Shown: positions 40,614-60,831 of the stretch, one piece after another
Numbering within the stretch: position 1 is the stretch's first letter
Layout: every line of letters begins with the position of its first letter
Assembly (NCBI GenBank): GCA_950097015.1
Contig: CATNEN010000032.1
Coordinates: forward strand, 1,736,001-1,800,000
DNA from: Macrostomum hystrix
Taxonomy: Eukaryota; Animalia; Platyhelminthes
Direction of reading: 5' to 3'
Length of the DNA stretch: 64,000 bases
Translations under genes and position numbers: made by a program
Notes under the pieces: generated by a model
What the model was told of the DNA's origin: nothing
Seen by the model: only the letters and a program-made list of their open reading frames with translations
The model's database searches: none

Positions 40614-40779
40614 CGCTCAAAGAAGTATCTGAGAACGCTGGAATGGCAACCAACGACAATTGAAATGATCTCATTTCTCTGGATTTGTAGCTCAAATATA
40701 AATAGAAGACACCTAGAAGCTTCTGACAGGTGGAAGACTTAAAGTATTTTAAAAAAAGATTGCTTCAGAGAGGCGATAT

Positions 40780-43680
40780 TAGAATATTAGACAGTGAGAT
40801 TTGGAGACTAGACACAGGGATTGGAATATTAGACAGTGAGATTTGGAGACTAGACACAGGGATTGGAATATTAGACAGTGAGATTTGGAGATTAGACACA
40901 GGGATTGGAATATTAGACAGTGAGATTTGGAGACTAGACACAGGGATTGGAATATTAGACAGTGAGATTTGGAGACTAGACACAGGGATTGGAATGTTAG
41001 ACAGTGAGATTTGGAGACTAGACACAGGGATTGGAATATTAGACAGTGAGATTTGGAGACTAGACACAGGGATTGGAATATTAGACAGTGAGATTTGGAG
41101 ACTAGACACAGGGATTGGAATATTAGACAGTGAGATTTGGAGACTAGACACAGGGATTGGAATATTAGATAGTGAGATTTGGAGATTAGACACAGGGATT
41201 GGAATATTAGACAGTGAGATTTGGAGACTAGACACAGGGATTGGAATATTAGACAGTGAGATTTGGAGACTAGACACAGGGATTGGAATGTTAGACAGTG
41301 AGATTTGGAGACTAGACACAGGGATTGGAATATTAGACAGTGAGATTTGGAGACTAGACACAGGGATTGGAATATTAGACAGTGAGATTTGGAGACTAGA
41401 CACAGGGATTGGAATATTAGACAGTGAGATTTGGAGATTAGACACAGGGATTGGAATATTAGACAGTGAGATTTGGAGACTAGACACAGGGATTGGAATG
41501 TTAGACAGTGAGATTTGGAGACTAGACACAGGGATTGGAATATTAGACAGTGAGATTTGGAGACTAGACACAGGGATTGGAATACTAGATAGTGAGATTT
41601 AGAGACTAGACACAGGGATTGGAATGTTAGACAGTGAGATTTGGAGATTAGACACAGGGATTGGAATATTAGACAGTGAGATTTGGAGACTAGACACAGG
41701 GATTGGAATATTAGACAGTGAGATTTGGAGATTAGACACAGGGATTGGAATATTAGACAGTGAGATTTGGAGACTAGACACAGGGATTGGAATGTTAGAC
41801 AGTGAGATTTGGAGACTAGACACAGGGATTGGAATATTAGACAGTGAGATTTGGAGACTAGACACAGGGATTGGAATACTAGATAGTGAGATTTAGAGAC
41901 TAGACACAGGGATTGGAATGTTAGACAGTGAGATTTGGAGATTAGACACAGGGATTGGAATATTAGACAGTGAGATTTGGAGACTAGACACAGGGATTGG
42001 AATATTAGACAGTGAGATTTGGAGACTAGACACAGGGATTGGAATATTAGACAGTGAGATTTGGAGACTAGACACAGGGATTGGAATATTAGACAGTGAG
42101 ATTTGGAGACTAGACACAGGGATTGGAATATTAGATAGTGAGATTTGGAGATTAGACACAGGGATTGGAATATTAGACAGTGAGATTTGGAGACTAGACA
42201 CAGGGATTGGAATATTAGACAGTGAGATTTGGAGACTAGACACAGGGATTGGAATGTTAGACAGTGAGATTTGGAGACTAGACACAGGGATTGGAATATT
42301 AGACAGTGAGATTTGGAGACTAGACACAGGGATTGGAATATTAGACAGTGAGATTTGGAGACTAGACACAGGGATTGGAATATTAGACAGTGAGATTTGG
42401 AGATTAGACACAGGGATTGGAATATTAGACAGTGAGATTTGGAGACTAGACACAGGGATTGGAATGTTAGACAGTGAGATTTGGAGACTAGACACAGGGA
42501 TTGGAATATTAGACAGTGAGATTTGGAGACTAGACACAGGGATTGGAATACTAGATAGTGAGATTTAGAGACTAGACACAGGGATTGGAATGTTAGACAG
42601 TGAGATTTGGAGATTAGACACAGGGATTGGAATATTAGATAGTGAGACTTGGAGACTAGACACAGGGATTGGAATATTAGACAGTGAGATTTGGAGATTA
42701 GACACAGGGATTGGAATATTAGATAGTGAGATTTGGAGACTAGACACAGGGATTGGAATATTAGATAGTGAGATTTGGAGACTAGACACAGGGATTGGAA
42801 TGTTAGACAGTGAGATTTGGAGACTAGACACAGGGATTGAAATATTAGACATTGAGATTTGGAGACTAGACACAGGGATTGGAATATTTGATAGTGAAAC
42901 TTGGAGACTAGACACAGGGATTGGAATATTAGATAGTGAGATTTGGAGACTAGACACAGGGATTGGAATACTAGATAGTGAGATTTGGAAACTAGACACA
43001 GGGATTGGAATATTAGACAGTGAGATTTGGAGACTAGACACAGGGATTGGAATACTAGATAGTGAGATTTGGAGACTAGACACAGGGATTGGAATGTTAG
43101 ACAGTGAGATTTAGAGACTAGACACAGGGATTGGAATATTAGACAGTGAGATTTGGAGACTAGACACAGGGATTGGAATATTAGACAGTGAGATTTGGAG
43201 ACTAGACACAGGGATTGGAATATTAGATAGTGAGATTTGGAGACTAGACACAGGGATTGGAATATTAGATAGTGAGATTTGGAGACTAGACACAGGGATT
43301 GGAATACTAGATAGTGAGATTTGGAGACTAGACACAGGGATTGGAATATTAGACAGTGAGATTTGGAGACTAGACACAGGGATTGGAATGTTAGACAGTG
43401 AGATTTGGAGACTAGACACAGGGATTGGAATATTAGACAGTGAGATTTGGAGACTAGACACAGGGATTGGAATATTAGACAGTGAGATTTGGAGACTAGA
43501 CACAGGGATTGGAATATTAGACAGTGAGATTTGGAGACTAGACACAGGGATTGGAATATTAGACAGTGAGATTTGGAGACTAGACACAGGGATTGGAATA
43601 TTAGATAGTGAGATTTGGAGACTAGACACAGGGATTGGATGAGATTTGGAGACTAGACACAGGGATTGGAATATTATTGG
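40780..43680. repeat. 42-bp minisatellite, about 69 units (ATTAGACAGTGAGATTTGGAGACTAGACACAGGGATTGGAAT)
   Basis: Directly visible; intergenic between paralogues B and A. Confidence 0.97.
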
Positions 43681-44199: not shown

Positions 44200-44910
44200 C
44201 CTGTCATTATCTACCGATTTGAATTACCCAATCTGTCATTATCTACCGATTTGAGTTACCCAATCTGTCATTATCTACCGATTTGAGTTACCCAATCTGT
44301 CATTATCTACCGATTTGAGTTACCCAATCTGTCATTATCTACCGATTTGAGTTACCCAATCTGTCATTATCTACCGATTTGAGTTACCCAATCTGTCATT
44401 ATCTACCGATTTGAGTTACCCAATCTGTCATTATCTACCGATTTGAATTACCCAATCTGTCATTATCTACCGATTTGAGCTACCCAATCTGTCATTATCT
44501 ACTGATTTGAATTACCCAATCTGTCATTATCTACCGATTTGAGTTACCCAATCTGTCATTATCTACCGATTTGAATTACCCAATCTGTCATTATCTACTG
44601 ATTTGAGTTACCCAATCTGTCATTATCTACCGATTTGAGCTACCTAATCTGTCATTATCTACTGATTTGAATTACCCAATCTGTCATTATCTACCGATTT
44701 GAGTTACCCAATCTGTCATTATCTACCGATTTGAGTTACCCAATCTGTCTTTGTCTACTGATTTGAATTACCCAATCTGTCATTATCTACCGATTTGAGC
44801 TACCTAATCTGTCATTATCTACTGATTTGAATTACCCAATCTGTCTTTGTCTACTGATTTGAATTACCCAATCTGTCTTTGTCTACTGATTTGAATTACC
44901 CAATCTGTCA
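44200..44910. repeat. 32-bp minisatellite (CTGTCATTATCTACCGATTTGAGTTACCCAAT)n
   Basis: About 22 units. Confidence 0.95.
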
Positions 44911-45034
44911 TTAAAAATAGTAAAATGACAAATAATTGGAGCAAGAACATACACATGAAATAAAACAAGTGGCAGCGTGGATTTTAAGGACAGCAGCTGC
45001 TGGTAGCTTCAGGGCGGTGACAGTCAAAAAGCTT

Positions 45035-48000
45035 TTACCAAGAGCCTTCTCCACTGCCGGGCATCGATTGTTGCTGATTGGCAGCCGCGCCAGCAGCAGC
45101 AGCAGCAGCGGCGGCGGCCGGCGTCCAGATTGGGTCCCTGGCCCAGGGCACGCACTCTGGCGGCGGCGGCCGCTCCGACTGGCAGGCCGGGTGTCGCTGG
45201 AGGCGAAGGAGCTCGGCTCGCTGCCTCTCGTCGGCAAGGCGTTCGACGAACACGGAGTCCAGGCGCTGCTTCATCCGGCGCAGCTCGTCGCTCTCCCAGG
45301 ACAGGCAGCGAACTCTGGCGGCCTCGGTCGAGTCTAAGTCAGCGCCGGCCTCTTCATCCGAGCTGGTGTAGTCTCTAGTGAGCACACTCTGATAGCGAGC
45401 TCTGGTGGACTCGTCTAGGTCATCTTTGATTGCTTCAAAGCTTTTCTGTCGTCGGTTGAGCTTCTGTTTTGATGTGGCGAGGCGGCAAGTGAACAGAATT
45501 GTGAGTCAATGTTCAGCTGGAAAGATAGATGTCTCGAGAGTACTAGAAAAGGTAAGCATAAGCTATCAGAATGTCTGGGAGATACTAAAGCGACCAGAAT
45601 AGCTGGGAGAGAAATTGAAGCTACCAGAACATTTGGATGATAGATAATATAGAAAATCTAGCTCGTAGCTAATAGAATGTCTTGGAGACACTGAAGCTAC
45701 CAGAGTGTCTTGGAGAGACTGAAGCTACCAGAATGTCTTGGAGACACTGAAGATACCAGAGTGTCTGGGAGACACTGAAGCTACCAGAGTGTCTTGAAGA
45801 GACTGAAGCTACCAGAATGTCTTGGAGACACTGAAGCTACCAGAGCGTCTTGGAGACACTGAAGCTACCAGAATGTCTGGGAGACACTGAAGCTACCAGA
45901 ATGTCTGGGAGACACTGAAGCTACCTGATGTCTTGGAGATATTGAAGCTACCAGAATGTCTGGGAGACACTGAAGCTACCAGAATGTCTGGGAGACACTG
46001 AAGCTACCAGAATGTCTGGGAGACACTGAAGCTACCTGATGTCTTGGAGATATTGAAGCTACCAGAATGTCTGGGAGACACTGAAGCTACCAGAATGTCT
46101 GGGAGACACTGAAGCTACCAGAATGTCTGGGAGACACTGAAGCTACCTGATGTCTTGGAGATATTGAAGCTACCAGAATGTCTGGGAGACACTGAAGCTA
46201 CCAGAATGTCTGGGAGACACTGAAGCTACCAGAATGTCTGGGAGACACTGAAGCTACCAGAATGTCTGGGAGACACTGAAGCTACCAGAATGTCTGGGAG
46301 ACACTGAAGCTACCAGAATGTCTGGGAGACACTGAAGCTACCAGAATGTCTGGGAGACACTGAAGCTACCTGATGTCTTGGAGATATTGAAGCTACCAGA
46401 ATGTCTGGGAGACACTGAAGCTACCAGAATGTCTGGGAGACACTGAAGCTACCAGAATGTCTTGGAGATATTGAAGCTACCAGAATAATGTCTGGGAGAG
46501 AAATTGAAGCTAGTAGAATGTGTGGGGCAGCTCAAATGCCTGTCTGGGTGTCAGTGACCGCGTTACTCACAGTCTGAATGAGTATCATTGAGTTAAACTT
46601 ATTCTTTCTAGACTTGGCAACAAAGTCCCGTCTGAGACGCTGGGTGTACCAGTTGCGCAAGTACTTCACTGACAAAACTGAAAACGGTACAGTGACAGCC
46701 AATGGCAAGGCTAGCTAAACACGTCAATCTTACAATAAAATATTTCAGTTAATCACGATCGAGAGCGACGTTGCAGACCCATGGCGATAGTCTTAACCAA
46801 AGTGTAAGGCAACATTTTCTTTTTTTCTTCTTTGCTTTATTTTGTTATAAAGGCGGAATGCATTCGCGGAAGTGTCTGCTGATGGCGTGTGCTCATTGGG
46901 GTGGGTCTGTTGATGGCGTGTGCTCATTGGGGTGGGTCTGCTGATGGCGTGTGCTCATTGGGGTGGGTCTGTTGATGGCGGGTGTACATCGAGGTGGGAT
47001 CTGTTGATGGCGTGTGTACATCGAGGTGGGATCTGTTGATGGCGTGTGTACAGTGGGGTGGGATCTGTTGATGGCGGGTGTACATTGGGGAGGGATCTAT
47101 TGATGGCGGGTGTACAGTGGGGTGGGATCTGTTGATGGTGGGTGTACATTGGGGAGGGATCTGTTGATGGCGGGAGTACAGTGGGGTGGGATCTGTTGAT
47201 GGCGGGTGTACATCGGGGTGGGATCTGTTGATGGCGGGTGTTCATCGGGGTGGGATCTGTTGATGGCGGGTGTACATCTGGGAGGGATCTGTTGATGGCG
47301 GGTGTACATCGGGGTGGGATCTGTTGATGGCGGGTGTTCATCGGGGTGGGATCTGTTGATGGCGGGTGTACATTGGGGTGGGATCTGTTGATGGCGGGTG
47401 TTCATTGGGGTGGAGTCATTGGAAAGCAGGGTGTACACTCGGGTGGGTCTGTTGATGGCGGGTGTACATCTGGGAGGGATCTGTTGATGGCGGGTGTTCA
47501 TTCGGGTGGAGTCATTGGAAAGCAGGGTGTACACTCGGGTGGGTCTGTTGATGGCGGGTGTACATCTGGGAGGGATCTGTTGATGGCGGGTGTTCATTGG
47601 GGTGGGATCTGTTGATGGCGGGTGTTCATTGGGGTGGAGTCATTGGAAAGCAGGGTGTACACTCGGGTGGGTCTGTTGATGGCGGGTGTACATCTGGGAG
47701 GGATCTGTTGATGGCGGGTGTTCATTGGGGTGGAGTCATTGGAAAGCAGGGTGTACACTCGGGTGGGTCTGTTGATGGCGGGTGTACATTGGGGTGGATT
47801 CAGTTGAAGGCAGGGTTGTACACTGCGAATAATACATGTTTACATCAGAAATAAAGCACTCACGGACTGAACGAAAATCAATGAATTGAGCCTATTTTGT
47901 CTGGCTTTGGATTGGAAATCGCGCTTTAGATTTTGGCTGTACCAATTGCGCATGTACTTTCCAGCATTTGCTGAAACAAGTGTGACAAAATAATCTCTTC

Positions 48001-51000
48001 GCTGCTTGCCTGACTCTGTATGAGGTGGGCAGCTTTAAAAATAACAGTGTGCGGCCCATCGCAAAGGAGTTTTAAGCAAAAATAATGGTGTGCATTGAAA
48101 TTTCACCAGGTCAGAAGAAATGTAATTTAGGAATGATGAGCTTTTAGAACTAATAAATGAAGCTATATCGCTCAATGTTGGTGATTAAAGCCAGCCCTTA
48201 AGATGAGCTAGCGCTGAACTTTAAGTAGACTTACAAACTGGGCAGAGATCAGTGAGTTAATTTTAGTCTGCTTGGCTTTCGCATTGAATTCGCGTTTAAG
48301 ATACTGGCCGTAGTAGCGCACATACTTCATTGAGACTTCTGAAAGTAACATGCTTGAGTGCTACAAAAACTCCGCTATACATACATGGAGCCTGAGGGAC
48401 ACATCGCAAAAATGTTTAAACAGCTGGAAGCAAGTTTTTGTTTACTAACCGTGAGATTTAAAGTAGTTACACTAGAAATTCTTCTTTTTTAGGAATTATT
48501 TTTTAACTTTTGTACTTTTTAACTCCTGTGTGTGCACCTCTGTGTACAACTCCAATAGAGTGAGGATGAATACAGACTGAGTGTACATTTTCAGTGGAGT
48601 GAGGTTGGATGCAGACTGACTGTACACTTTCAGTGGAGTGAGGTTGGATGCAGACTGAGTGTACACTTTCAGTGGAGTGAGGTTGGATGCAGACTGAGTG
48701 TACACTTTCAGCAGAGTGAGGTTGGATGCAGACTGAGTGCACACTTTCAGTGGAGTGAGGTTGGATGCAGACTGAGTGTACACTTTCAGTGGAGTGAGGT
48801 TGGCTGCAGACTGAGTGTACACTTTCAGTGGAGTGAGGTTGGATGCAGACTGAGTGTACACTTTCAGTGGAGTGAGGTTGGATGCAGACTGAGTGTACAC
48901 TTTCAGTGGAGTGAGGTTGGATGCAGACTGAGTGTACACTTTCAGTGGAGTGAGGTTGGATGCAGACTGAGTGTACACTTTCAGTGGAGTGAGGTTGGCT
49001 GCAGACTGAGTGTACACTTTCAGCAGAGTGAGGTTGGATGCAGACTGAGTGTACACTTTTAGCAGAGTGAGGTTGGATGCAGACTGAGTGTACACTTTCA
49101 GTGGAGTGAGGTTGGATGCAGACTGAGTGTACACTTTTAGCAGAGTGAGGTTGGATGCAGACTGAGTGTACACTTTCAGTGGAGTGAGGTTTGCTGCAGA
49201 CTGAGTGTACACTTTCAGCAGAGTGAGGTTGGATGCAGACTGAGTGTACACTTTCAGTGGAGTGAGGTTTGCTGCAGACTGAGTGTACACTTTCAGCAGA
49301 GTGAGGTTGGATGCAGACTGAGTGTACACTTTTAGCAGAGTGAGGTTGGATGCAGACTGAGTGTACACTTTCAGTGGAGTGAGGTTTGCTGCAGACTGAG
49401 TGTACACTTTTAGCAGAGTGAGGTTGGCTGCAGACTGAGTGTACACTTTCTGTGGAGTGAGGTTGGCTGCAGACTGAGTGTACACTTTCAGTGGAGTGAG
49501 GTTGGCTGCAGACTGAGTGTACACTTTCAGTGGAGTGAGGTTGGATGCAGACTGAGTGTACACTTTCAGTGGAGTGAGGTTGGATGCAGACTGAGTGTAC
49601 ACTTTCAGTGGAGTGAGGTTGGATGCAGACTGAGTGTACACTTTCAGTGGAGTGAGGTTGGCTGCAGACTGAGTGTACACTTTCAGTGGAGTGAGGTTGG
49701 ATGCAGACTGAGTGTACACTTTCAGTGGAGTGAGGTTGGATGCAGACTGAGTGTACACTTTCTGTGGAGTGAGGTTGGCTGCAGACTGAGTGTACACTTT
49801 CAGTGGAGTGAGGTTGGATGCAGACTGAGTGTACACTTTTAGCAGAGTGAGGTTGGATGCAGACTGAGTGTACACTTTCTGTGGAGTGAGGTTGGATGCA
49901 GACTGAGTGTACACTTTCAGTGGAGTGAGGTTGGCTGCAGACTGAGTGTACACTTTCAGTGGAGTGAGGTTGGATCCAGACTGAGTGTACACTTTCAGCG
50001 GAGTGAATTGGAATACAGACTGAGTGCACATTTTTAATGGAGTGCCAATGTATCTGAATGGTATTAGAAGATAAGACGAGCTAGTACTCACAGTCTGTGT
50101 GATAATTAGAGAGTTCAGTTTAGTTCGCTTGGCCTTGTTATTAAAATCGCGCCTAAGATACTGGCGATACCAGCTGCGCAAATATTTAGCGCTATTAACT
50201 GAAAGCAAATAACTATAATTGAAATTTTTTCAAAAGAACCTCTATAATCTGAACGGCGCAGAGGAACTCATCGCAAAATATCAGTCACGATAATATCAGT
50301 AAGTACAGTAAGTGTGCATCTAGACTGAATGCTATTACGTCGTTGTGACAGTTCGTTAGAAATGCGTAATTTCGCGGCCTGGTGGAGACTGAGAATAGAG
50401 GGGTTAGTCTGGTTAATCTACACTGGGAGTGAGGGGGTTAGTCTGGCCGATGTACACTGGGAGTAAGGGGGTTAGTCTGGCTGATGTACACTGGGAGTAA
50501 GGGGGTTAGTCTGGCTGATGTACACTAGGAGTGAGGGGGTTAGTCTGGTTAATGTACACTGGGAGTGAGGGGGTTAGTCTGGCTGATGTACACTGGGAGT
50601 AAGGGGGTTAGTCTGGCTGATGTACACTGGGAGTAAGGGGGTTAGTCTGTCTGATGTACACAATGAGCGTGGGAGGTTAGTCTGGCTGATGTACACTGGG
50701 AGTAAGGGGGTTAGTCTGGCTGATGTACACAATGAGCGTGGGAGGTTAGTGTGACTGATGTACACTGGGAGTAAGGGGGTTAGTCTGGCTGATGTACACT
50801 ATGAGCGTGGGAGGTTAGTCTGGCTGATGTACACTATGAGCGTGGGAGGTTAGTCTGGCTGATGTACACTATGAGCGTGGGAGGTTAGTCTGGCTGATGT
50901 ACACTGGGAGTAAGGGGGTTAGTCTGGCTGATGTACACTGGGAGTAAGGGGGTTAGTCTGGCTGATGTACACTATGAGCGTGGGAGGTTAGTCTGGCTGA

Positions 51001-54000
51001 TGTACACTGGGAGTAAGGGGGTTAGTCTGGCTGATGTACACTGGGAGTAAGGGGGTTAGTCTGGCTGATGTACACTAGGAGTGAGGGGGTTAGTCTGGTT
51101 AATGTACACTGGGAGTGAGGGGGTTAGTCTGGCTGATGTACACTGGGAGTAAGGGGGTTAGTCTGGCTGATGTACACTAGGAGTGAGGGGGTTAGTCTGG
51201 TTAATGTACACTGGGAGTGAGGGGGTTAGTCTGGCTGATGTACACTGGGAGTAAGGGGGTTAGTCTGTCTGATGTACACTGGGAGTAAGGGGGTTAGTCT
51301 GGCTTGCTTAAGCGAATCTAGAACGCTCTCATCAGCGGTACAGCACTCACAGTCTGCAAGCTGATCAGTGAGGAAATCTTTGACTGATCGAATTTGGCTC
51401 TGAAGCTACGCTTTAGAAACTGGGTGTACCAGATCCGCAGATATTTAAATGAAGCAGCTAAAAATGGCAAGTTTTGCAGACGTTATTAAAAATAGGAGAA
51501 TAACGGACAAAAAACTTGAGAACTGCGCGGACGAGTTGCAAGGCCAAAGTAGAAAATGCCCCTACATTAACTTACAAGAGTGGCTGAAATGCTAAAGTTT
51601 GGCTTTAGCCGACGCAGATAAGGATAGCGCCAGTTTTTAGAATAGTGCGGCTTCAAATAGCGATGACAGGAGGCTAGAAAGTTGAGCAAAAGCATCATTT
51701 ATAGACTCAACTAGCAATAACACAGAGGGCTGGCCGGATAGCAAAGAGCAACTTTAATTCGGAGAATTTTTCTCCTTGGCAAGTGTGAACCCCAATGTCC
51801 TAGAATTACTAACCATTATTTTTGTAAACAATTTTGCACTATCAGATTTGTAAGACTTGCGCTTGTGATCTCGTTTTAACACGCTGTCAAAGTAGATTCT
51901 AAAGTAGAGCGTCATCATTCCTATGCAATTATTCAGATTAGAATGCAATGTGCAATTCATACTACTGCACAAAGTAGAGGTTCATTAAAACAAATGCAAG
52001 CTAGCAAAGGAGTTGCAGTGGCTTTCTCGCATTAACTCAAAACATTTCTTACTATGATTAACTAACAGCATACAAAGTAAGAAGTTATGAAAATATTGAT
52101 TCAAAATCCTTCGACTTCGTGTCCAACATTTGGTACTGGGGTTTAATTGGTTCTTGGATTTGGTACTGGTGCTTAATTGGTACTTAAATTTGGTACTGGG
52201 ATTTGATTATTGTGGTTCGCTACTAAGGTTATGTACCAATCCTTTTTTATTTGGTACTGGGGTTTAATTGGTTCTTGGATTTGGTACTGGTGCTTAATTG
52301 GTACTTAAATTTGGTACTGGGATTTGATTATTGTGGTTCGCTACTAAGGTTATGTACCAATCCTTTTTTATTTGGTACTGGGGTTTAATTGGTTCTTGGA
52401 TTTGGTACTGGTGCTAATTGGTACTTAAATTTGGTACTGGGATTTGATTATTGTGGTTCGCTACTAAGGTTATGTACCAATCCTTTTTTATTTGGTACTG
52501 GGGTTTAATTGGTTCTTGGATTTGGTACTGGTGCTAATTGGTACTTAAATTTGGTACTGGGATTTGATTATTGTGGTTCGCTACTAAGGTTATGTACCAA
52601 TCCTTTTTTATTTGGTACTGGGGTTTAATTTGTTCTTGGATTTGGTACTGGTGCTAATTGGTACTTAAATTTGGTACTGGGATTTGATTATTGTGGTTCG
52701 CTACTAAGGTTATGTACCAATCCTTTTTTATTTGGTACTGGGGTTTAATTTGTTCTTGGATTTGGTACTGGTGCTAATTGGTACTTAAATTTGGTACTGG
52801 GATTTGATTATTGTGGTTCGCTACTAAGGTTATGTACCAATCCTTTTTTATTTGGTACTGGGGTTTAATTGGTTCTTGAATTTGGTACTGGTGCTTAATT
52901 GGTACTTAAATTTGGTACTGGGATTTGATTATTGTGGTTCGCTACTAAGGTTCTGTACCAATCCTTTTTTATTTGGTACTGGGGTTTAATTTGTTCTTGG
53001 ATTTGGTACTGGTGCTAATTGGTACTTAAATTTGGTACTGGGATTTGATTATTGTGGTTCGCTACTAAGGTTATGTACCAATCCTTTTTTATTTGGTACT
53101 GGGGTTTAATTGGTTCTTGAATTTGGTACTGGTGCTTAATTGGTACTTAAATTTGGTACTGGGATTTGATTATTGTGGTTCGCTACTAAGGTTCTGTACC
53201 AATCCTTTTTATTTGGTACTGGGGTTTAATTGGTTCTTGGATTTGGTACTGGTGCTTAATTGGTACTTAAATTTGGTACTGGGATTTGATTATTGTGGTT
53301 CGCTACTAAGATTATGTACCAATCCTTTTTTATTTGGTACTGGGGTTTTGAAACTGGAGATTTTGGTACAAGGACATTGGTATTTGGTCTTGGTCTTGAT
53401 ACTAGGATTTAGTACAGGGAGAATCTTAGAGATTCGGTACAGTATGATTTTATTTTAGTACTCTGGTAATTAGATTTTGCACTATAATTTAGGTATACTA
53501 GGTCTCCGTTACAAGAAGGTTTCGGGTGCAGAATTTTAAATCTAGTGCTTAAAATCAGAAAAAATGAGTATGATAGCACAAGAGTAAACATACAGACAGG
53601 AATCTCTGATTTACCCGCATCTGCTGCAACAGTTTGGCATTGCCATCCTTGACAACTTTTAAGTTGTTATCTCGTTTTAATACGCTGTAGAAGTAAATCT
53701 TAAAGTAGCGATCCATCTTAGCTGATAATTTTAAGGATTTATTAGAAGATAGAAAAAAACTGCGTTTTAGCTATTTGCTGGCGGGTATGGCATTTCTAAG
53801 AGAGTCTGATTTCAGAGAGTGCTGCAGTGGCTATCATAAATGTCATCCATTTTTTGAAGCATAAACCACACACTTAAGAACAAAAGTCTAGAAAAGGATA
53901 GTTAATCGAGGCATGTGGTGAGCTTCTTACCAGATTACTGGTGACAATTCTGGCCATCCTAGCAGCATCCTCGAACTTTTTATTAGTAGGCTTCAGGGTG

Positions 54001-55743
54001 GACTTGTAGTAGATGCTCAGGTAGTGCTTCATGGCACTGTCTGTGCGCATAAGGCCGATAGTTTTGTCAAGCAACATGTCAAGGCACTCACAATGCGCCT
54101 AATATTCCACTAACTTCAGCCGCTTTCAGGCGAAATTGTGTCAAAAAGTCCTATTTTTTTCTATATAAATTTTAACAGAGCGAACACGCTAATTAGTTGA
54201 TTAAATATCATATTTGGCAGGTTTTCTCAGCTTTCAACCGCATCAGAAGGGCAGCTGAATGTCAGTTATGATCGCTCATTGATTTAAAAAAGCAGACTTA
54301 AAAAATTGGTATCGATAAACACAATAGAAATCCCGCCTGAAGCCACACTGAATTAAATAAATTTAAATTAAAGCTGCGAGCGATCAGCTAACCAACCGGT
54401 GCTTTATTAACTTTAACCTAGGCGAATGTGTAAAAACAATTTAGTGACATCTTTGCGATGGCCCTGCAACGCCCTCTGATAACAAATAACCTTAAATGAC
54501 TAATGAATAGTGCGACAATTAACTCCTCCTTTCGGAGGACTTTTCTGCTTTTATAAAATAGCAGATAATTGATCTTGAAAAATTGGGATTAAACTCACTG
54601 CGCCACGCTTCGACATTGGCTGGTCTCTGCCGGCCCAGCGACAGGGCCTTGTCAATCACCCTATTGGCTGCCAGAACGTTGGCTCTGGCTGAATACGGGA
54701 GGGCGAAGTCGAACACATTGCTCCCAGTTTCTTCTTTTAGCACCCGGTAGGCGCGTCGAAGGATTCCCTTCCATTCGTTGGACAGTTCGGAGGAGCTGCC
54801 TTCCTCGGCGCCGCCGCTGACGCCAGCACCAGAGGAGCGACCACCGGCGCCAGGCTGTCTGTTCGAGAACATGGACGAGTTTCCTGAGCCGGACTGGTCA
54901 AACATAATATCCGTCTCCATTAGAACGCAATCGTCGTCCGAGTCGTTTATTGTGGCCTCTAATTTCATAGCTGCCGCTGCTGACGATGCTGACGCCGAAG
55001 CGTTTGAGGACTGCTGCTGTTGGTGCTTTTCAGATTTCTCTGACTTAGAGGCCGGAGTGTGCTGGTGATGATCAGCGAAGGCCGGCGGAGGCGGTGGGCA
55101 CTTTAAATGAAACATGAAAGAGAGTCAGATCAGCTTAGCTTAGACGCAGTCAGATCACATTAGATAAGGAATCTAATCCCATTGGATAAGGAATCTAATC
55201 CCATTGGATAAGGAATCTAATACCATTTGATAAGGAATCTAATCCCATTGGATAAGGAATCTAATCCCATTAGATAAGGAGTCTAATCCCATTAGATAAG
55301 GAATCTAATCCCATTAGATAAGGAATCTAATCCCATTAGATAAGAAATATAATCCCATTAGATAAGGAATCTAATCCCATAAGATAAGGAATCTAATCCG
55401 ATTAGATAAGGAATCTAATCCCATTAGATAAGGAATCTAATCCCATTAGATAAGCAATCTAATCCCATTAGATAAGGAATCAGGTTCTACTCATCGAGCT
55501 CACCATGGCGTGCTCGTCAGCGACGCTCGCCAGTCGTTGCACGGCGGGATCCAGGACATCCATGAGGTGACCGTGCAGCTGAGCCACAATACGAAAGGCC
55601 ATGAGGAGATCTCTGACAGCCATATTGTCTATGAGCATAGTGGCACTGGAGATGGTGCACTCAAACATGGTCAGCGGTGAGAAGGTGCCGGCGCCGCTTG
55701 CAGACCCGAGCTGCGACGGCATGGAGAAAGCGGTGGACGCCAT
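45035..55743 (-). CDS. Paralogue B, C14orf93-like: exon 1 55743-55504, exon 2 55100-54599, [one of 9 cassette exons], last exon 45463-45035
   Basis: ATG|gtgagc to ttaaag|TGC (phase 0); exon 2 ends TGG CGC A|gtgagt (phase 1); last exon aaacag|AAG CTC AAC (phase 0) KLNRRQK..YTSSDEE..WES..LD..SERPPP..PWA; homologous to A and C. Confidence 0.85.
45680..46490. repeat. 28-bp minisatellite (CTGAAGCTACCAGAATGTCTGGGAGACA)n between B9 and the last exon
   Basis: Directly visible. Confidence 0.93.
46571..46677 (-). CDS. Cassette exon B9 (107 nt): ILSVKYLRNWYTQRLRRDFVAKSRKNKFNSMILIQT
   Basis: ttttcag|TT...ACT|gtgagt; 3n+2; homologous to B5-B8. Confidence 0.85.
46758..46790 (-). promoter_or_regulatory. 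Selector sequence for B9
   Basis: Plus strand ATCGAGAGCGACGTTGCAGACCCATGGCGATAG resembles the docking transcript ATCAGAGGGCGTTGCAGGGCCATCGCAAAG, so it is complementary to it in the pre-mRNA. Confidence 0.75.
46875..47810. repeat. 32-bp minisatellite between B8 and B9
   Basis: (GGGGTGGGATCTGTTGATGGCGGGTGTACATT)n with variants. Confidence 0.92.
47864..47970 (-). CDS. Cassette exon B8 (107 nt): TNAGKYMRNWYSQNLKRDFQSKARQNRLNSLIFVQS
   Basis: gtttcag|CA...TCC|gtgagt; 3n+2. Confidence 0.85.
48053..48066 (-). promoter_or_regulatory. Selector sequence for B8
   Basis: Plus strand GGCCCATCGCAAAG vs docking GGGCCATCGCAAAG. Confidence 0.7.
48235..48338 (-). CDS. Cassette exon B7 (104 nt): KVSMKYVRYYGQYLKREFNAKAKQTKINSLISAQF
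   Basis: ctttcag|AA...TTT|gtaagt; 3n+2. Confidence 0.85.
48392..48411 (-). promoter_or_regulatory. Selector sequence for B7
   Basis: Plus strand CTGAGGGACACATCGCAAAA matches both ends of the docking site. Confidence 0.65.
48560..50030. repeat. 39-bp minisatellite between B6 and B7
   Basis: About 37 units (GAGTGAGGTTGGATGCAGACTGAGTGTACACTTTCAGTG). Confidence 0.95.
50092..50198 (-). CDS. Cassette exon B6 (107 nt): INSAKYLRSWYRQYLRRDFNNKAKRTKLNSLIITQT
   Basis: gctttcag|TT...ACT|gtgagt; 3n+2. Confidence 0.85.
50259..50278 (-). promoter_or_regulatory. Selector sequence for B6
   Basis: Plus strand CAGAGGAACTCATCGCAAAA matches both ends of the docking site. Confidence 0.65.
50400..51302. repeat. 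34-bp minisatellite between B5 and B6
   Basis: (GGGGGTTAGTCTGGCTGATGTACACTGGGAGTAA)n with variants. Confidence 0.93.
51351..51457 (-). CDS. Cassette exon B5 (107 nt): TASFKYLRIWYTQFLKRSFRAKFDQSKISSLISLQT
   Basis: tttttag|CT...ACT|gtgagt; 3n+2. Confidence 0.85.
51535..51546 (-). promoter_or_regulatory. Selector sequence for B5
   Basis: Plus strand GTTGCAAGGCCA vs docking GTTGCAGGGCCA (12 bp with one G-U pair). Confidence 0.62.
51576..51673 (-). CDS. Cassette exon B4 (98 nt): TSCHRYLKPHYSKNWRYPYLRRLKPNFSISATL
   Basis: tttctag|CC...CTT|gtaagt; 3n+2; RYL..Y motif; more divergent. Confidence 0.65.
51723..51746 (-). promoter_or_regulatory. Selector sequence for B4
   Basis: Plus strand CAGAGGGC...ATAGCAAAG matches both ends of the docking site. 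Confidence 0.6.
51814..51920 (-). CDS. Cassette exon B3 (107 nt): RMMTLYFRIYFDSVLKRDHKRKSYKSDSAKLFTKIM
   Basis: tgcatag|GA...ATG|gttagt; 3n+2; close to B2. Confidence 0.8.
52012..52022 (-). promoter_or_regulatory. Selector sequence for B3 (short)
   Basis: Plus strand GTTGCAGTGGC vs docking GTTGCAGGGC. Confidence 0.45.
52125..53350. repeat. ~120-bp composite tandem repeat (about 10 units, internal TTTGGTACTGG subrepeats) between B2 and B3
   Basis: Sequence lines recur every 120 nt (52381, 52501, 52621, 52741). Confidence 0.93.
53615..53721 (-). CDS. Cassette exon B2 (107 nt): TKMDRYFKIYFYSVLKRDNNLKVVKDGNAKLLQQMR
   Basis: ttatcag|CT...CGG|gtaaat; 3n+2. Confidence 0.8.
53812..53840 (-). promoter_or_regulatory. 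Selector sequence for B2
   Basis: Plus strand TCAGAGAGTGCTGCAGTGGCTATCATAAA; in the pre-mRNA pairs along nearly the whole docking site (3 G-U, 3 mismatches, 1 bulge). Confidence 0.75.
53931..54040 (-). CDS. Cassette exon B1 (110 nt): NSAMKHYLSIYYKSTLKPTNKKFEDAARMARIVTSNL
   Basis: gcacag|AC...CTG|gtaaga; 3n+2; shares YL..YY/WY..TLKPT with the single exon of paralogue C. Confidence 0.82.
54451..54480 (-). promoter_or_regulatory. Docking site for mutually exclusive splicing of paralogue B (pre-mRNA AUCAGAGGGCGUUGCAGGGCCAUCGCAAAG)
   Basis: About 120 nt downstream of the exon 2 donor; complementary to sequences 50-120 nt upstream of B2-B9. Confidence 0.78.
55160..55480. repeat. 22-bp minisatellite in intron 1 of paralogue B (GATAAGGAATCTAATCCCATTA)n
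   Basis: About 14 units. Confidence 0.93.
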
Positions 55744-57740: not shown

Positions 57741-60700
57741 TCAATGATCAACCGTCGCAGACGCCTCCGTCTCTTCGATCATCATCTCTTCGTCTTCCTC
57801 AGCTTCCTTCTCTTCCGCATCCTCATCCGCGCCATCTTTATGATCATCTTTGTCGAGTCCGGTGTCGTCGTCGTTCCAAGTTGCCATGGAGTCCGCCGCG
57901 ACAGCCGCCACCACTGGGGCGTCCAGCACGCCGACAGTCTTGTCGACGGCCCAGTCTGGGGCGTCAGCGGGCGGCCGCCTGCTGCTGACATAGCCCGGAT
58001 GCCGCCGCACCCTGGCCAGCTCCTGCTTCTCCCTGTCATTGGCCAGCTCTTCGGCGAAGTGGTCGTCCAGTGTTGACTTCAGCCTGGCCGACTCGACCGT
58101 CTCCCAGGGCAGCAGTTTGACGTAGAGGCAACCGTCCGGCTCCTCTTCGTCAGAGCTGACCAGGTCCCGCTCCAGCAGGGCTGCCATGCGATCTCCGGTG
58201 GCCGGAGACAGCCGGTTCAGGGTCAGCAGGCTTTGCAGACTTTGGCGACGCTGGTTCAGTTTCTGGAGAAAGGTCGTTTGAAAAGTATCGCATGGCCTTC
58301 GTACAGTATCTGAGTGCGTGGCTTAAACTGACTCTTTGCTGGCTGCGTATCATAGGCTAACAGAGCAAGGGCTACGGAAGAAAACGAGGAAGGGGATCAA
58401 AAAGTCGATGAGAGGTACAGGAAATAGGCAAAAACTGAAAGGTATCCAAAGTCATTAAAATATATTTAATTTACACTATAAAGAGAAGTGTACAAATGGG
58501 TTGTAGCCTAATGGTTAGAGCGTCGGACTTACGACTAGAAGGTCGGGGGTTCGAGTCGCGTCTACACAGGAACAGTTTGTGTCCTTTAGCAAGATACTTA
58601 ACTCTTGTTAAATGGGTGCCAGCATTAGCTGGGGCAATTGAGGGTGGGTGTGGCGTCCCCCAGTCCATGGACTGAACAGCCGTACGCAGCCTTCAAAAGC
58701 GCCGGCTGCACATCTCACCCAATTTGGGCAGGTGTAGTCAATTAGTATTATTAATTATTACCCTATAAAACTGGCAATTATTCAGTATGTAGAACACACA
58801 AATAGATCCAAACCTTGTCCATGGACATCTGGACGCGACAGGCGGACTTGCAATGAGTCGGCTTCAAAGTCTTCCTGTACCACTGCTCCAGATAGCGCGT
58901 AAACAAGTCTGGCAATAGTGACAAGAGGCACTAGAATATATAAACATAAAAGCATGACAATTTATAAGAGAAGATACAAAAGGCCTGACATAGCACACTC
59001 ACTCTTCCATGACTTTACATCCGGTGTAGGCTTAGCGCTCATAGCCACAGCTCTACTGATGATAATTTCGGCAGAGGCGCGATTCTCATGGGCCGAATAG
59101 CTGCGATTAGAGAAGGATTAAAAGAAAATGTTAGACACCTTCGTATGATCCCGTTAAGCAACAACGGGTACAGAGCTTTCTAACACCAACTAGTAGGTCT
59201 TCTAAATTACACTTGATTGGTCTTCTAAATTACACTTGATTGGTCTTCTAAATTACACTTGATTGGTCTTCTAAATGACACCTAATTGGTCTTCCAAATT
59301 ACACTTGATTGGTCTTCCAAATTACACTTGATTGGTCTTCTAAATTACACTTGATTGGTCTTCTAAATTACACTTGATTGGTCTTCTAAATTACACTTGA
59401 TTGGTCTTCTAAATTACACTTGATTGGTCTTCTAAATTACACTTGATTGGTCTTCTAAATTACACTTGATTGGTCTTCTAAATTACACTTGATTGGTCTT
59501 CTAAATTACACTTGATTGGTCTTCTAAATTACACTTAATTGGTCTTCTAAATTACACCCAATTGGTCTTCTAAATGACACCTAATTGGTCTTCTAAATTA
59601 CACTTGATTGGTCTTCTAAATTACACCCAATTGGTCTTCTAAATGACACCTAATTGGTCTTCCAAATTACACTTGATTGGTCTTCCAAATTACACTTGAT
59701 TGGTCTTCTAAATGTCACCTAATTGGTCTTCTAAATTACACTTAATTGGTCTTCTAAATTACACTCGATTGGCCTTCTAAATGACACCTAATTGGTCTTC
59801 TAAATTACACTTAATTGGTCTTCTAAATGTCACCTAATTGGTCTTCTAAATAACACCTAATTGGTCTTCTAAATTACACTTAATTGGTCTTCTAAATGTC
59901 ACCCAATTGGTCTTCTAAATGACACCTAATTGGTCTTCTAAATGTCACCTAATTGGTCTTCTAAATTACACTTAATTGGTCTTCTAAATGACACCTAATT
60001 GGTCTTCTAAATTACACTTAATTGGTCTTCTAAATGTCACCTAATTGGTCCTCTAAATGACACCTTATTGAAGTCCTTATCTAAGATCTATTAGACAGGA
60101 TCTATTAGAGTTATAATTATCACTCACGACTTAGTGAAGTCGAACAGCTGCTGCCCCTCGGACTGCAGGACTCTGTAGGCCTTGCGCAACAGCTGCTTCC
60201 AGCTGTCAGACAAGCCCCTGGTGGCGCTGCTGTCCCTGTTGTTGACCTTGGAGGCGCCCGCAGTTGCAGCAGCAGCCGCAGAAGTAGACTGCCGCCTGGA
60301 GGCCCTAGAAGCAGCACTAGAAGAGGAGCCAGTAGTAGGCTTGGCTTTGTCCGCAACAGTAGCCGTGCCAGTCTTCTCCGTTGCTGTGTTCATCGACAAG
60401 ATACTTCGTCTGGCCTTACTAGTACTACTAATAGTACTATTGTTAGCCGCTAAAGCATCTTCGAAATGTTCATTAGAAATTGATGATCTGCCATTTCTTC
60501 TTTTAGTAATGGGAGGCGGAGGCGGCCGCTGCTGCGGACGAGTCTTGGAGTCTGGCTCCTTGGCTTCAATCTCCTCGGAGTGTCGGCTATAGAGATTAGC
60601 TAAGCGGATCAGCCGGCTAGCCGACGGTTCAACGCACTCCACCAGGCGGCCGTGCAACTGGGAGACAATCCTCAGGGCTAGGACTAGGTCGGCCAGTTCC

Positions 60701-60831
60701 ATGGAGTCCAGCAACAGTTGGGCATTGTGAATACTGCATTCGAATAGAGCTATGGACGAGAACGGGACGCCGGCTGCGGCTGCTGTGGCAGCGTCGGGCA
60801 GAGTTGGCGACTGGCACAGTAAAGTAGCCAT
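57741..60831 (-). CDS. Paralogue C, C14orf93-like: exons 60831-60128, 59100-59003, 58908-58814 (single helix exon), 58262-57741
   Basis: Phases 2, 1, 0 are compatible. LFECSIHNAQLLLDSM domain; WKQLLRKAYRVL..FDFTKSY; NLFTRYLEQWYRKTLKPT; KLNQRRQ..VSSDEE..WET..LD..SSRRPP..PDWA. Confidence 0.82.
58498..58760 (+). mobile_element. tRNA-derived SINE with CORE/Meta-like central segment, in the last intron of paralogue C
   Basis: A box TAGCCTAATGG and B box GGTTCGAGTC, followed by GTGTCCTTTAGCAAGATACTTAAC..AAATGGGTGCCA; AT-rich tail; related copies elsewhere in the window. Confidence 0.75.
59195..60065. repeat. 23-bp minisatellite in intron 1 of paralogue C (AAATTACACTTGATTGGTCTTCT)n
   Basis: About 38 units. 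Confidence 0.94.

What the first reader, a model, noticed from the sequence alone, without database searches (positions are those of the whole stretch)
46571..54040. The swapped segment looks like a DNA-recognition helix, suggesting a variable-specificity transcription factor
Seen: the cassette follows a conserved region ([W/I][K/R].[I/L]L[R/K]..Y..L...FDF...[Y/W]...N....V[I]..A......W[K/R]) and is rich in K/R/Y/W with helical spacing. It precedes the KL.RRQ..SSDEE..WES..LD..SxRxP..PxW tail. From memory this layout matches the human C14orf93 C-terminus (…KGACVAYFLTKRREY…MSDEED…SDRLP), with the cassette at the ACxAYF helix; A2 even starts GACRYNF. Inference: a BEN/MADF-like helical domain whose recognition helix is varied by splicing, analogous to mod(mdg4)/lola with a shared N-terminus and variable DNA-binding part.
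Basis: inference. Interest (0 to 1): 0.8.

Follow-up and report, generated by a model that had tools for sequence, protein, structure and literature searches.

The report
Swapped exon recodes a long basic helix
A flatworm gene picks one of eight interchangeable exons, each encoding the middle of one long, positively charged helix in a conserved domain of unknown function that is distantly related to human C14orf93; no evidence shows that it is a BEN/MADF-type DNA-reading helix.

Summary
Eight AG/GT-flanked cassette exons lie on the minus strand at exactly 54040-46571. They are 104-110 nt, all 2 mod 3. They sit between a constant exon ending at 54599 and a tail exon starting at 45463. Spliced contigs from four public runs join four of the cassettes directly to the constant or tail exon.

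Each cassette encodes 35-37 residues with net charge +5 to +8 and 15% aromatic residues. In an AlphaFold model of the Macrostomum lignano orthologue (pLDDT 91.6), the cassette is the centre of one 56-residue helix.

The protein belongs to a family found in animals and fungi. It links to Pfam DUF4616 only through one intermediate sequence and through structure matches. That DUF4616 is the C14orf93 family rests on my memory.

No BEN, MADF or SANT match appears in 146 family members. No solved structure matches convincingly; Myb-like three-helix domains score only Z 4.3-4.8, which is noise level.

M. lignano keeps orthologous cassettes in the same order under purifying selection. Starfish and scallop have a single copy of this exon.

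My reading is a splice-variable basic binding surface, most likely for nucleic acid. The ligand is untested. The scan noted a similar array in a related gene elsewhere in this genome.

The parts
55504..55743 (-). Predicted first coding exon (ATG at 55743, donor GT at 55503). It encodes the N-terminal conserved helical motif shared with the two tandem paralogues.
   Evidence: Sequence read and ORF list. The junction CPPPP matches the M. lignano relative P0006. The splice junction is inferred, not seen in reads.
54599..55100 (-). Constant exon. It ends with the two short helices that precede the cassette (W-K-x-x-L-R...F-D-F...N...W-R). Donor in phase 1.
   Evidence: The donor at 54599 is fixed by spliced contigs in 3 runs. 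An ~845-nt contig covers the exon end in each of the four runs. The acceptor at 55100 is inferred from the sequence.
53931..54040 (-). Cassette c1 (110 nt, 37 aa). It contains a proline (L-K-P-T) in the middle of the helix.
   Evidence: AG/GT flanks. A contig joins it directly to the tail exon. M. lignano orthologue m1 is identical at 25/36 residues, pN 0.17 against pS 0.66.
53615..53721 (-). Cassette c2 (107 nt).
   Evidence: Joint 54599->53721 with GT..AG ends in 3 runs, and a direct joint to the tail. M. lignano orthologue m2 is identical at 20/35.
51814..51920 (-). Cassette c3 (107 nt), closest to c2.
   Evidence: AG/GT flanks and a 58-bit HMM hit. No separate M. lignano counterpart was found.
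51351..51457 (-). Cassette c4 (107 nt).
   Evidence: AG/GT flanks. M. lignano orthologue m3 is identical at 30/35, pN 0.08 against pS 0.82.
50092..50198 (-). Cassette c5 (107 nt).
   Evidence: AG/GT flanks and a 58-bit HMM hit.
48235..48338 (-). Cassette c6 (104 nt, one residue shorter).
   Evidence: AG/GT flanks. A contig joins the constant exon to the start of c6 in run X3.
47864..47970 (-). Cassette c7 (107 nt).
   Evidence: AG/GT flanks. M. lignano m4 is identical at 24/35. The c7 isoform is 80% identical to the modelled protein.
46571..46677 (-). Cassette c8 (107 nt).
   Evidence: AG/GT flanks. Contigs join the constant exon to the start of c8 in runs X1 and X4.
45035..45463 (-). Constant tail exon. 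It holds the K-L-x-R-R-Q end of the long helix, the invariant S-S-D-E-E acidic motif, W-E-S, L-D and S-x-R-x-x-P...P-x-W, then the stop codon.
   Evidence: Sequence. Loose ends of contigs from c1 and c2 match its first 30 bases. A profile of the three paralogue tails finds 408 relatives among 1.8 billion proteins.

Best explanation
The swapped exon encodes the central 35-37 residues of a single, roughly 56-residue basic helix. This helix is the spine of a conserved domain of about 210 residues.

Layout of the helix. Its first third packs with two short helices from the constant exon to form a three-helix module. Its last third packs with the alpha/beta module encoded by the tail exon.

What stays and what changes. 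A fixed set of aromatic and leucine positions is kept in every cassette and anchors the helix: Y7, aromatic 11-12, L16, L32 and I33. Conserved lysines and arginines at 6, 9, 17, 18, 23 and 28, and the variable positions between them, make up the rest of the surface.

Consequence (inferred). Choosing one of eight exons yields eight versions of one positively charged surface on an otherwise identical protein. In c1 the version also has a proline kink. The most likely ligand is a polyanion in the nucleus, either DNA or RNA; which one is not resolved. On this reading the array diversifies binding specificity.

Family. The domain is not a BEN, MADF or SANT domain. It belongs to an uncharacterised family of animals and fungi that is tagged Pfam DUF8263 and remotely linked to DUF4616. 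From memory, DUF4616 is the C14orf93 family.

Shown versus inferred. Shown: the exon anatomy, mutually exclusive use of four cassettes, the helix and its position in the model, family membership, and purifying selection on individual cassettes. Inferred: which face is exposed, that this face binds something, and the nature of the ligand.
For: Exons and splicing:
- Exon anatomy and reading frames.
- Spliced contigs showing one cassette per transcript.

Structure:
- AlphaFold model of the M. lignano orthologue P0153:98-316, which is 80% identical to the window's c7 isoform. pLDDT 91.6, pTM 0.77.
- One helix spans residues 62-117. The cassette is residues 67-102, at pLDDT 96-98.

Cassette chemistry:
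- Net charge +5 to +8. Y7 and L16 are invariant, and the basic positions are conserved.
- The same segment is basic across the whole family, with R/K above 50% at many columns.

Selection and history:
- M. lignano has five cassettes in the same order. c1, c2 and c4 are 57-86% identical to their counterparts but only about 25% identical to each other. pN is 0.08-0.24 against saturated pS of 0.65-0.87.
- A related M. lignano gene has its own array.
- The segment is a discrete single exon in starfish and scallop.

Literature on the mammalian protein:
- Tagged mouse P19 (the C14orf93 homologue) is nuclear, with predicted bipartite NLSs starting at residues 291 and 369 (PMC10163356).
- RTFC was recovered in screens for RNA-binding and for phosphopeptide-binding proteins (PMC5322522).
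Against: - No sequence or fold link to any known nucleic-acid-binding domain. The PDB profile search gives best E 0.34, Foldseek best E 2.2 and VIA best Z 5.8.
- I had no model coordinates, so exposure of the variable positions rests on a helical-wheel argument that is not statistically significant.
- The model is of the orthologue, not of the window's own isoforms.
- In the window's c4-c8 cassettes the second half is more hydrophobic (L-N-S-L-I) than the family consensus. Part of the variation may therefore be in packing rather than on the surface.
- The mouse relative is also reported as secreted (PMC10163356).
- The link to DUF4616 rests on one intermediate sequence.
Confidence: 0.5

Rival explanations
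1. The C-terminal domain is a BEN/MADF/SANT-like DNA-binding domain, the cassette is its recognition helix, and the eight isoforms are transcription factors with different DNA motifs.
For: - The first 90 model residues form a three-helix arrangement. Its third helix begins with the end of the constant exon and the first ~18 cassette residues.
- Myb-like domains (ARR1, LUX, PHR2), the Zeste DNA-binding domain and winged-helix domains appear in the exhaustive structure search at Z 4.3-4.8 with 56-70 aligned residues.
- The helix is basic and aromatic.
- The mouse relative is nuclear (PMC10163356).
Against: - No BEN, MADF or Myb/SANT Pfam hit in any piece of the window or in 146 relatives at E<=1.
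- One UniRef member is named 'MADF-like' (P0161), but it gives no Pfam hit.
- The Z values lie within the tool's stated chance range for helical models. Foldseek probability for Zeste is 0.10.
- HHpred and InterPro on mouse P19 found no domain (PMC10163356).
- The helix is 56 residues long and bridges two modules, unlike an HTH recognition helix.
Confidence: 0.15
2. The long helix is a structural spine or hinge and a protein-docking surface. The cassettes change the geometry between the two modules, or the choice of protein partner, rather than nucleic-acid recognition.
For: - Conserved hydrophobic positions run along the whole cassette.
- c1 carries a conserved proline that should kink the helix, in both species and in paralogue B's single cassette.
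- The second half of c4-c8 is hydrophobic.
- An invariant acidic S-S-D-E-E motif followed by a disordered linker lies close by in the sequence. It could fold back on the basic helix.
- RTFC was picked up in a phosphopeptide-binder screen (PMC5322522).
Against: - Net charge of +5 to +8 is kept in every cassette. That is more than packing requires.
- No partner is known.
- The helix is predicted as part of an intramolecular fold, not as a free coiled coil.
Confidence: 0.25
3. The basic cassette is mainly a nuclear-localisation or sorting signal. The isoforms differ in where the protein goes (nucleus, cytoplasm or secreted) rather than in what it binds.
For: - NLS predictors place a bipartite NLS starting at residue 369 of mouse P19 (PMC10163356).
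- By the PF15394 coordinates of P0177, that position falls near the cassette-equivalent helix (the mapping is my inference).
- Mouse P19 is reported as both nuclear and secreted.
Against: - Every cassette is similarly basic.
- The invariant K-L-x-R-R-Q-K just after the cassette is constant, so all isoforms keep a basic cluster.
- Eight cassettes kept distinct across species under purifying selection is more variety than a localisation switch needs.
- The segment is a confidently folded helix, not a linear motif.
Confidence: 0.1

Closest known systems
Pfam DUF4616 (PF15394), which I recall as the family of human C14orf93/RTFC and mouse 4931414P19Rik (P19), together with the overlapping Pfam DUF8263 (PF26792)
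   Same: Same order of elements: two short helices, a long basic helix with an A-C-x-x-Y-F-type start, K-L-x-R-R, an acidic S-S-[DE]-E-E motif, W-E-S, and S-x-R-x-P...P-x-W. A family profile reaches the DUF4616 member P0177. Structure matches to DUF4616- and DUF8263-bearing clusters give TM 0.47-0.64. DUF8263 is the precomputed tag on relatives P0107 and P0147.
   Different: Neither the window's own pieces nor the Macrostomum proteins reach PF15394 directly. The Macrostomum genes have a different N-terminal region. They also have multiplied the helix exon into mutually exclusive arrays, whereas starfish and scallop relatives have one copy. The function of C14orf93 itself is unknown (PMC5322522, PMC10163356).
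Dscam1-type clusters of mutually exclusive exons (also 14-3-3zeta, Mhc and MRP in insects)
   Same: A tandem array of homologous exons with the same phase and near-identical length that is not a multiple of three. One exon is used per transcript. The variation falls on a defined structural element of an otherwise constant protein.
   Different: The animal is a flatworm, not an arthropod. The varied element is the middle of an intracellular basic helix, not an Ig-domain face. There are eight cassettes here, five in the M. lignano orthologue, and separate arrays in paralogues.
FOXP1 exon 18/18b (from my own knowledge: a mutually exclusive exon pair that alters the forkhead domain's DNA preference in embryonic stem cells)
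   Different: FOXP1's domain is a proven DNA binder and has two alternatives. Here DNA binding is unproven, the fold has no solved relative, and there are eight alternatives.
mod(mdg4) and lola
   Same: One gene yields many isoforms with a shared part and a variable part presumed to set target specificity.
   Different: Those genes use alternative 3' terminal exons (partly by trans-splicing) that encode whole zinc-finger modules. Here an internal exon inside one helix is swapped, and both flanks are constant.

Membership tests
BEN domain | Significant match to the Pfam BEN model | tested here: not met
   No BEN hit at E<=1 in the window's exon translations, in 30 full-length relatives or in the 146-member scan.
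BEN domain | Fold similarity to solved BEN domain structures | tested here: not met
   No BEN entry appears among the Foldseek rows shown or the top 50 of the exhaustive VIA search. A weak or missing match does not prove a different fold.
MADF / Myb-SANT three-helix DNA-binding domains | Significant match to the Pfam MADF or Myb/SANT models | tested here: not met
   None. P0161, which UniRef names as MADF-like, gave zero Pfam families.
MADF / Myb-SANT three-helix DNA-binding domains | Three-helix fold with the third helix as recognition helix | tested here: inconclusive
   Model residues 1-90 align with ARR1, LUX, PHR2 and Zeste DNA-binding domains at Z 4.3-4.8, rmsd 2.7-3.8 and 56-70 residues. 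This is within the tool's stated chance range.
DUF4616 (PF15394; C14orf93 family by my recollection) | Score above the Pfam gathering threshold (27 bits) | tested here: not met
   No window piece or Macrostomum protein hits PF15394. Of 146 relatives only 3 hit at E<=1, and only P0177 passes the threshold with 47.2 bits.
DUF4616 (PF15394; C14orf93 family by my recollection) | Homology through an intermediate sequence covering the same domain | tested here: met
   Profile A2, which includes Macrostomum proteins, hits P0177 at E 1e-12 in a 5.8-billion-protein database. P0177 residues 38-245 match PF15394 positions 270-479 at E 2.3e-12. Language-model features and structure also point to DUF4616/DUF8263 clusters.
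DUF4616 (PF15394; C14orf93 family by my recollection) | That PF15394 is built on vertebrate C14orf93, and that human C14orf93 aligns with the cassette at its A-C-x-A-Y-F helix | not testable with these tools
   No vertebrate C14orf93 sequence was returned by any search. No paper in the library mentions DUF4616 or PF15394. The model length of 524 fits the 538-541-residue mammalian proteins (PMC10163356).
DUF8263 (PF26792) | Pfam match | tested here: inconclusive
   The precomputed tag PF26792 is carried by relatives P0107 (scallop), P0147 (Clytia) and P0177. My own hmmscan runs never listed PF26792, so the local Pfam copy may lack it.
Mutually exclusive exon cluster | Tandem homologous exons with the same splice phase and a length that is not a multiple of three | tested here: met
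   Eight exons of 104-110 nt, all 2 mod 3, all AG/GT flanked. Skipping or double inclusion gives an early stop.
Mutually exclusive exon cluster | Transcripts carry exactly one cassette | tested here: met
   Contigs join const->c2->tail, c1->tail, const->c6 and const->c8. No cassette-to-cassette joint was seen. Only c1, c2 and the constant exon lay within the stretch that could be laid, and contigs drop rare forms.
mod(mdg4)/lola-type variable transcription factor | Alternative 3' terminal exons encoding alternative DNA-binding modules | tested here: not met
   The variable exon is internal, and the tail exon is shared by all isoforms.

The most novel reading that the evidence does not exclude
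The DUF8263/DUF4616 domain is a previously unrecognised nucleic-acid-binding fold whose long basic helix reads sequence. Macrostomum has turned it into a splice-programmable reader with eight specificities from one gene, and further arrays in paralogues. This would also give human C14orf93/RTFC its first molecular function.
Probability: 0.25. Interest if true: 0.85.

Novelty: new variant of a known kind. Interest (0 to 1): 0.6.

Why it matters
C14orf93/RTFC is a conserved protein reported in the nucleus. It has been linked to familial thyroid cancer and to cortical development, yet it has no known domain or mechanism.

If the remote link holds, the flatworm arrays point to one part of that domain, the long basic helix, as the part evolution chose to diversify. 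Evolution has also kept each version distinct across species. That gives a concrete, testable place to look for the ligand.

It is also a clear case, outside arthropods, of a multi-cassette mutually exclusive exon array acting on an intracellular protein. The predicted fold has no convincing solved relative.

Tried and rejected
Searches that found nothing useful:
- Pfam scans of every exon translation and of relatives gave nothing except DUF4616 on one intermediate.
- The PDB sequence profile search gave only noise.
- Foldseek against the PDB and against viral models found nothing.
- The exhaustive VIA search gave best Z 5.8 for the whole domain. A separate model of the C-terminal half (pLDDT 87.3) gave best Z 4.1. 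Tyrosine-recombinase core-binding domains recur there at Z 3.2-3.9. I treat this as chance.
- The word search with P0177 found only P0177 itself. The word search with full-length alignment A2 was swamped by low-complexity candidates. No search returned a vertebrate C14orf93.

Ideas dropped:
- I considered that the family is carried by transposons, because language-model neighbours include fungal DUF6532/DUF6698 clusters at 0.80-0.81. I dropped this. Those scores are at chance level, and the starfish and scallop genes are ordinary multi-exon genes beside unrelated host genes.
- UniRef names of M. lignano cluster members (CUT, PDZ, FHA, MADF-like) were not reproduced by hmmscan. I ignored them.

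Limits of what could be run:
Only 53420-54699 could be laid.
- The window's own spliced isoforms could not be folded, because they have no single reference. The M. lignano orthologue was folded instead.
Full report
**What is there.** The gene lies on the minus strand.

Eight exons follow. They are c1 54040-53931, c2 53721-53615, c3 51920-51814, c4 51457-51351, c5 50198-50092, c6 48338-48235, c7 47970-47864 and c8 46677-46571. Each is flanked by AG and GT. Lengths are 110, 107, 107, 107, 107, 104, 107 and 107 nt, all 2 mod 3.

The tail exon starts at 45463 with K-L-N-R-R-Q and runs to the stop near 45035. A cassette HMM run over all six frames finds exactly these eight at 55-64 bits, plus the single cassette of the upstream paralogue at 17 bits. 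Every const+cassette+tail join is an open frame. Leaving the cassette out, or including two, gives an early stop.

**Use in RNA.** The four public runs that hold this stretch have no recorded library type, but their contigs are spliced.
- One joint, 54599->53721 with GT..AG ends, is present in three runs.
- c2 and c1 each continue directly into the first bases of the tail exon.
- The constant exon continues directly into c8 in two runs and into c6 in one run.
- No cassette-to-cassette joint was seen.

So four of the eight cassettes are shown to be used one at a time. The other four lie in stretches I could not lay, because the introns are full of tandem repeats.

**Organism and family.** A profile of the tails of the three tandem paralogues in this window (alignment A1) found 408 relatives among 1.8 billion representative proteins. 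The best hits are hypothetical proteins of the flatworm Macrostomum lignano. More distant hits come from starfish (Patiria, Acanthaster), scallop, oysters, amphioxus, a hydrozoan and a sponge. All are named 'uncharacterized'.

The window comes from a Macrostomum species close to, but not identical with, M. lignano. The domain is about 80% identical between the two.

Alignments A2, A4 and A5 show one conserved C-terminal architecture of about 210 residues across the family. The window's cassette aligns with the family's conserved helix of the type A-C-[KR]-x-Y-F-x-S-L-[KR]-D...G...H...R...R, which immediately precedes the nearly invariant K-L-x-R-R-Q.

**The C14orf93 claim.** None of the window's pieces and none of the Macrostomum proteins hits any Pfam family. 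In a scan of 146 relatives, the only family matched more than twice was PF15394 (DUF4616). Three members matched it, and only P0177 scored above threshold, with 47 bits and E 2.3e-12 over profile positions 270-479 of 524.

P0177 is in turn hit by the family profile A2 at E 1e-12. A structure search of the model against ESM Atlas clusters finds eukaryotic clusters carrying DUF4616 (TM 0.50/0.64) and DUF8263 (TM 0.47) over residues ~79-216. Language-model features point the same way. DUF8263 is also the precomputed tag on the scallop and Clytia relatives.

That PF15394 is the C14orf93 family is my recollection. No search returned a vertebrate C14orf93, and no paper in the library mentions the Pfam name. 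I therefore rate the C14orf93 relationship as probable but remote, resting on one intermediate sequence.

**Structure.** I could not hand in the window's spliced isoforms, so I modelled the M. lignano orthologue P0153:98-316 with a 40-sequence family alignment. The model has mean pLDDT 91.6 and pTM 0.77.

The predicted elements, in order, are:
- helix 7-24;
- helix 38-54;
- one continuous helix 62-117;
- helix 120-129;
- a disordered acidic stretch after S-S-D-E-E;
- a small alpha/beta unit.

The cassette is residues 67-102. It lies wholly inside the 56-residue helix, at pLDDT 96-98. However, it is the middle of a spine that bridges two modules, not a short recognition helix.

**Fold comparisons.** Foldseek finds nothing in the PDB (best E 2.2) or among viral models. 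The exhaustive VIA search gives best Z 5.8, and only for residues 1-90. Rows for Myb-like domains (ARR1, LUX, PHR2), Zeste and winged-helix domains sit at Z 4.3-4.8.

The tool's own note says that helical models without relatives typically reach far higher values by chance. So this is no evidence for a Myb/MADF fold, though it does not exclude a generic three-helix arrangement whose third helix starts the cassette.

A separate model of the C-terminal half (pLDDT 87.3) has best Z 4.1. HHpred and InterPro on mouse P19 also found no domain, according to PMC10163356.

**Cassette chemistry.** K+R is 23%, aromatic residues are 15% and acidic residues are 4.5%. Net charge is +5 to +8 in every cassette.
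- Y7 and L16 are invariant. Aromatic 11-12, L32 and I33 are conserved. F20 is conserved in c4-c8.
- K/R at positions 6, 9, 17, 18, 23 and 28 are conserved.
- Positions 2, 3, 5, 10, 13, 15, 21, 22, 24, 25, 27, 34, 35 and 37 vary.

On a helical wheel the conserved hydrophobic set points to about 52 degrees, and the basic and variable sets to about 235 degrees. This clustering is no stronger than in random draws, so exposure of the variable face is an inference.

c1 carries a proline in L-K-P-T. Its M. lignano orthologue and the single cassette of the upstream paralogue carry it too. This should kink the helix.

**Evolution.** The M. lignano orthologue lies in locus L004, just upstream of the orthologue of the window's paralogue A, as in the window. 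It has five cassettes in the same order.
- c1/m1 are identical at 25/36 residues, c2/m2 at 20/35 and c4/m3 at 30/35. c1, c2 and c4 are only about 25% identical to each other.
- Non-synonymous differences are 0.08-0.24 per site, against saturated synonymous differences of 0.65-0.87.

Individual cassettes, including their distinguishing residues, are therefore under purifying selection.

A more distant M. lignano paralogue (P0006, locus L001) has its own array of cassette-like 107-nt exons. In the starfish and scallop genes the same segment is a discrete exon ending right before K-L/M-x-R-R/K, and it is single-copy. The exon is thus an old unit that Macrostomum multiplied.

**Interpretation.** What is shown is a splice-selected variable stretch in the centre of a conserved basic helix. 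Each variant has been kept by selection. The protein belongs to a family whose mammalian member is reported as nuclear (PMC10163356) and was recovered in an mRNA-interactome screen and a phosphopeptide-binder screen (PMC5322522).

I commit to a variable polyanion-binding surface, most likely for nucleic acid, as the best reading (confidence about 0.5). Within that, DNA versus RNA is open. Three rivals remain live:
- the literal BEN/MADF transcription-factor version (0.15);
- a hinge or protein-docking role (0.25);
- tuning of localisation (0.1).

The decisive tests are accessibility and co-folding calculations on model coordinates, and binding assays on two or three isoforms.

Noticed in passing
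window 45667-46526, 46875-47822, 48558-50044, 50400-51304, 52128-53348, 55154-55481; also 40778-43639 and 44201-44913: Large minisatellite arrays fill four of the seven introns between cassettes, plus the c8-to-tail intron and the intron before the constant exon. Periods are 22-120 nt, with 10-68 copies at 87-98% identity. Each array has a different unit. They blocked read-laying.
   Followed up: partly
window 57744-60831 (paralogue B) and 36152-40613 (paralogue A), minus strand: Two further genes of the same family lie in tandem on the same strand. B has a single cassette near 58800-58900 that shares T-L-K-P-T with c1. A has differently built cassettes at about 37000-39400.
   Followed up: partly
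L004:3550-7144 (M. lignano NIVC01002989.1): The M. lignano orthologue has five cassettes where this genome has eight. c3, and probably two of c5, c6 and c7, have no one-to-one partner, so the array has gained or lost exons since the species split.
   Followed up: yes
L001:11800-14200 (M. lignano NIVC01000068.1, gene of P0006): A more distant paralogue has its own run of at least five cassette-like AG/GT exons of about 107 nt. The annotated protein uses only one of them. A 12.6-kb intron follows.
   Followed up: partly
L002:16370-16486 (Patiria miniata) and L003:11032-11148 (Mizuhopecten yessoensis): In starfish and scallop the cassette-equivalent segment is a separate single-copy exon. Its 3' boundary falls just before the conserved K-L/M-x-R-R/K, so the exon unit predates the flatworm duplications.
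   Followed up: yes
proteins P0152-P0154, P0161-P0163, P0016, P0169: UniRef names for M. lignano members of these clusters (CUT, PDZ, FHA, Rab-GAP, Ribosomal_L28e and 'Alcohol dehydrogenase transcription factor Myb/SANT-like') do not fit. hmmscan finds no Pfam family in P0153 or P0161 and no Rab-GAP/TBC match in P0016. The names should not be used as evidence for a MADF link.
   Followed up: partly
window 53790-54031, 54083-54317, 54332-54484: Low-depth contigs (depth 2-4, against 22-34 on the constant exon) lie on intron sequence between the constant exon and c2. The 53790-54031 contig also overlaps most of c1. They are most simply unspliced pre-mRNA.
   Followed up: no
window 63159-63758, minus strand: This ORF contains a motif that looks by eye like the SANT domain of a SMARCC/BAF155-type chromatin remodeller subunit. 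I did not run it against Pfam.
   Followed up: no
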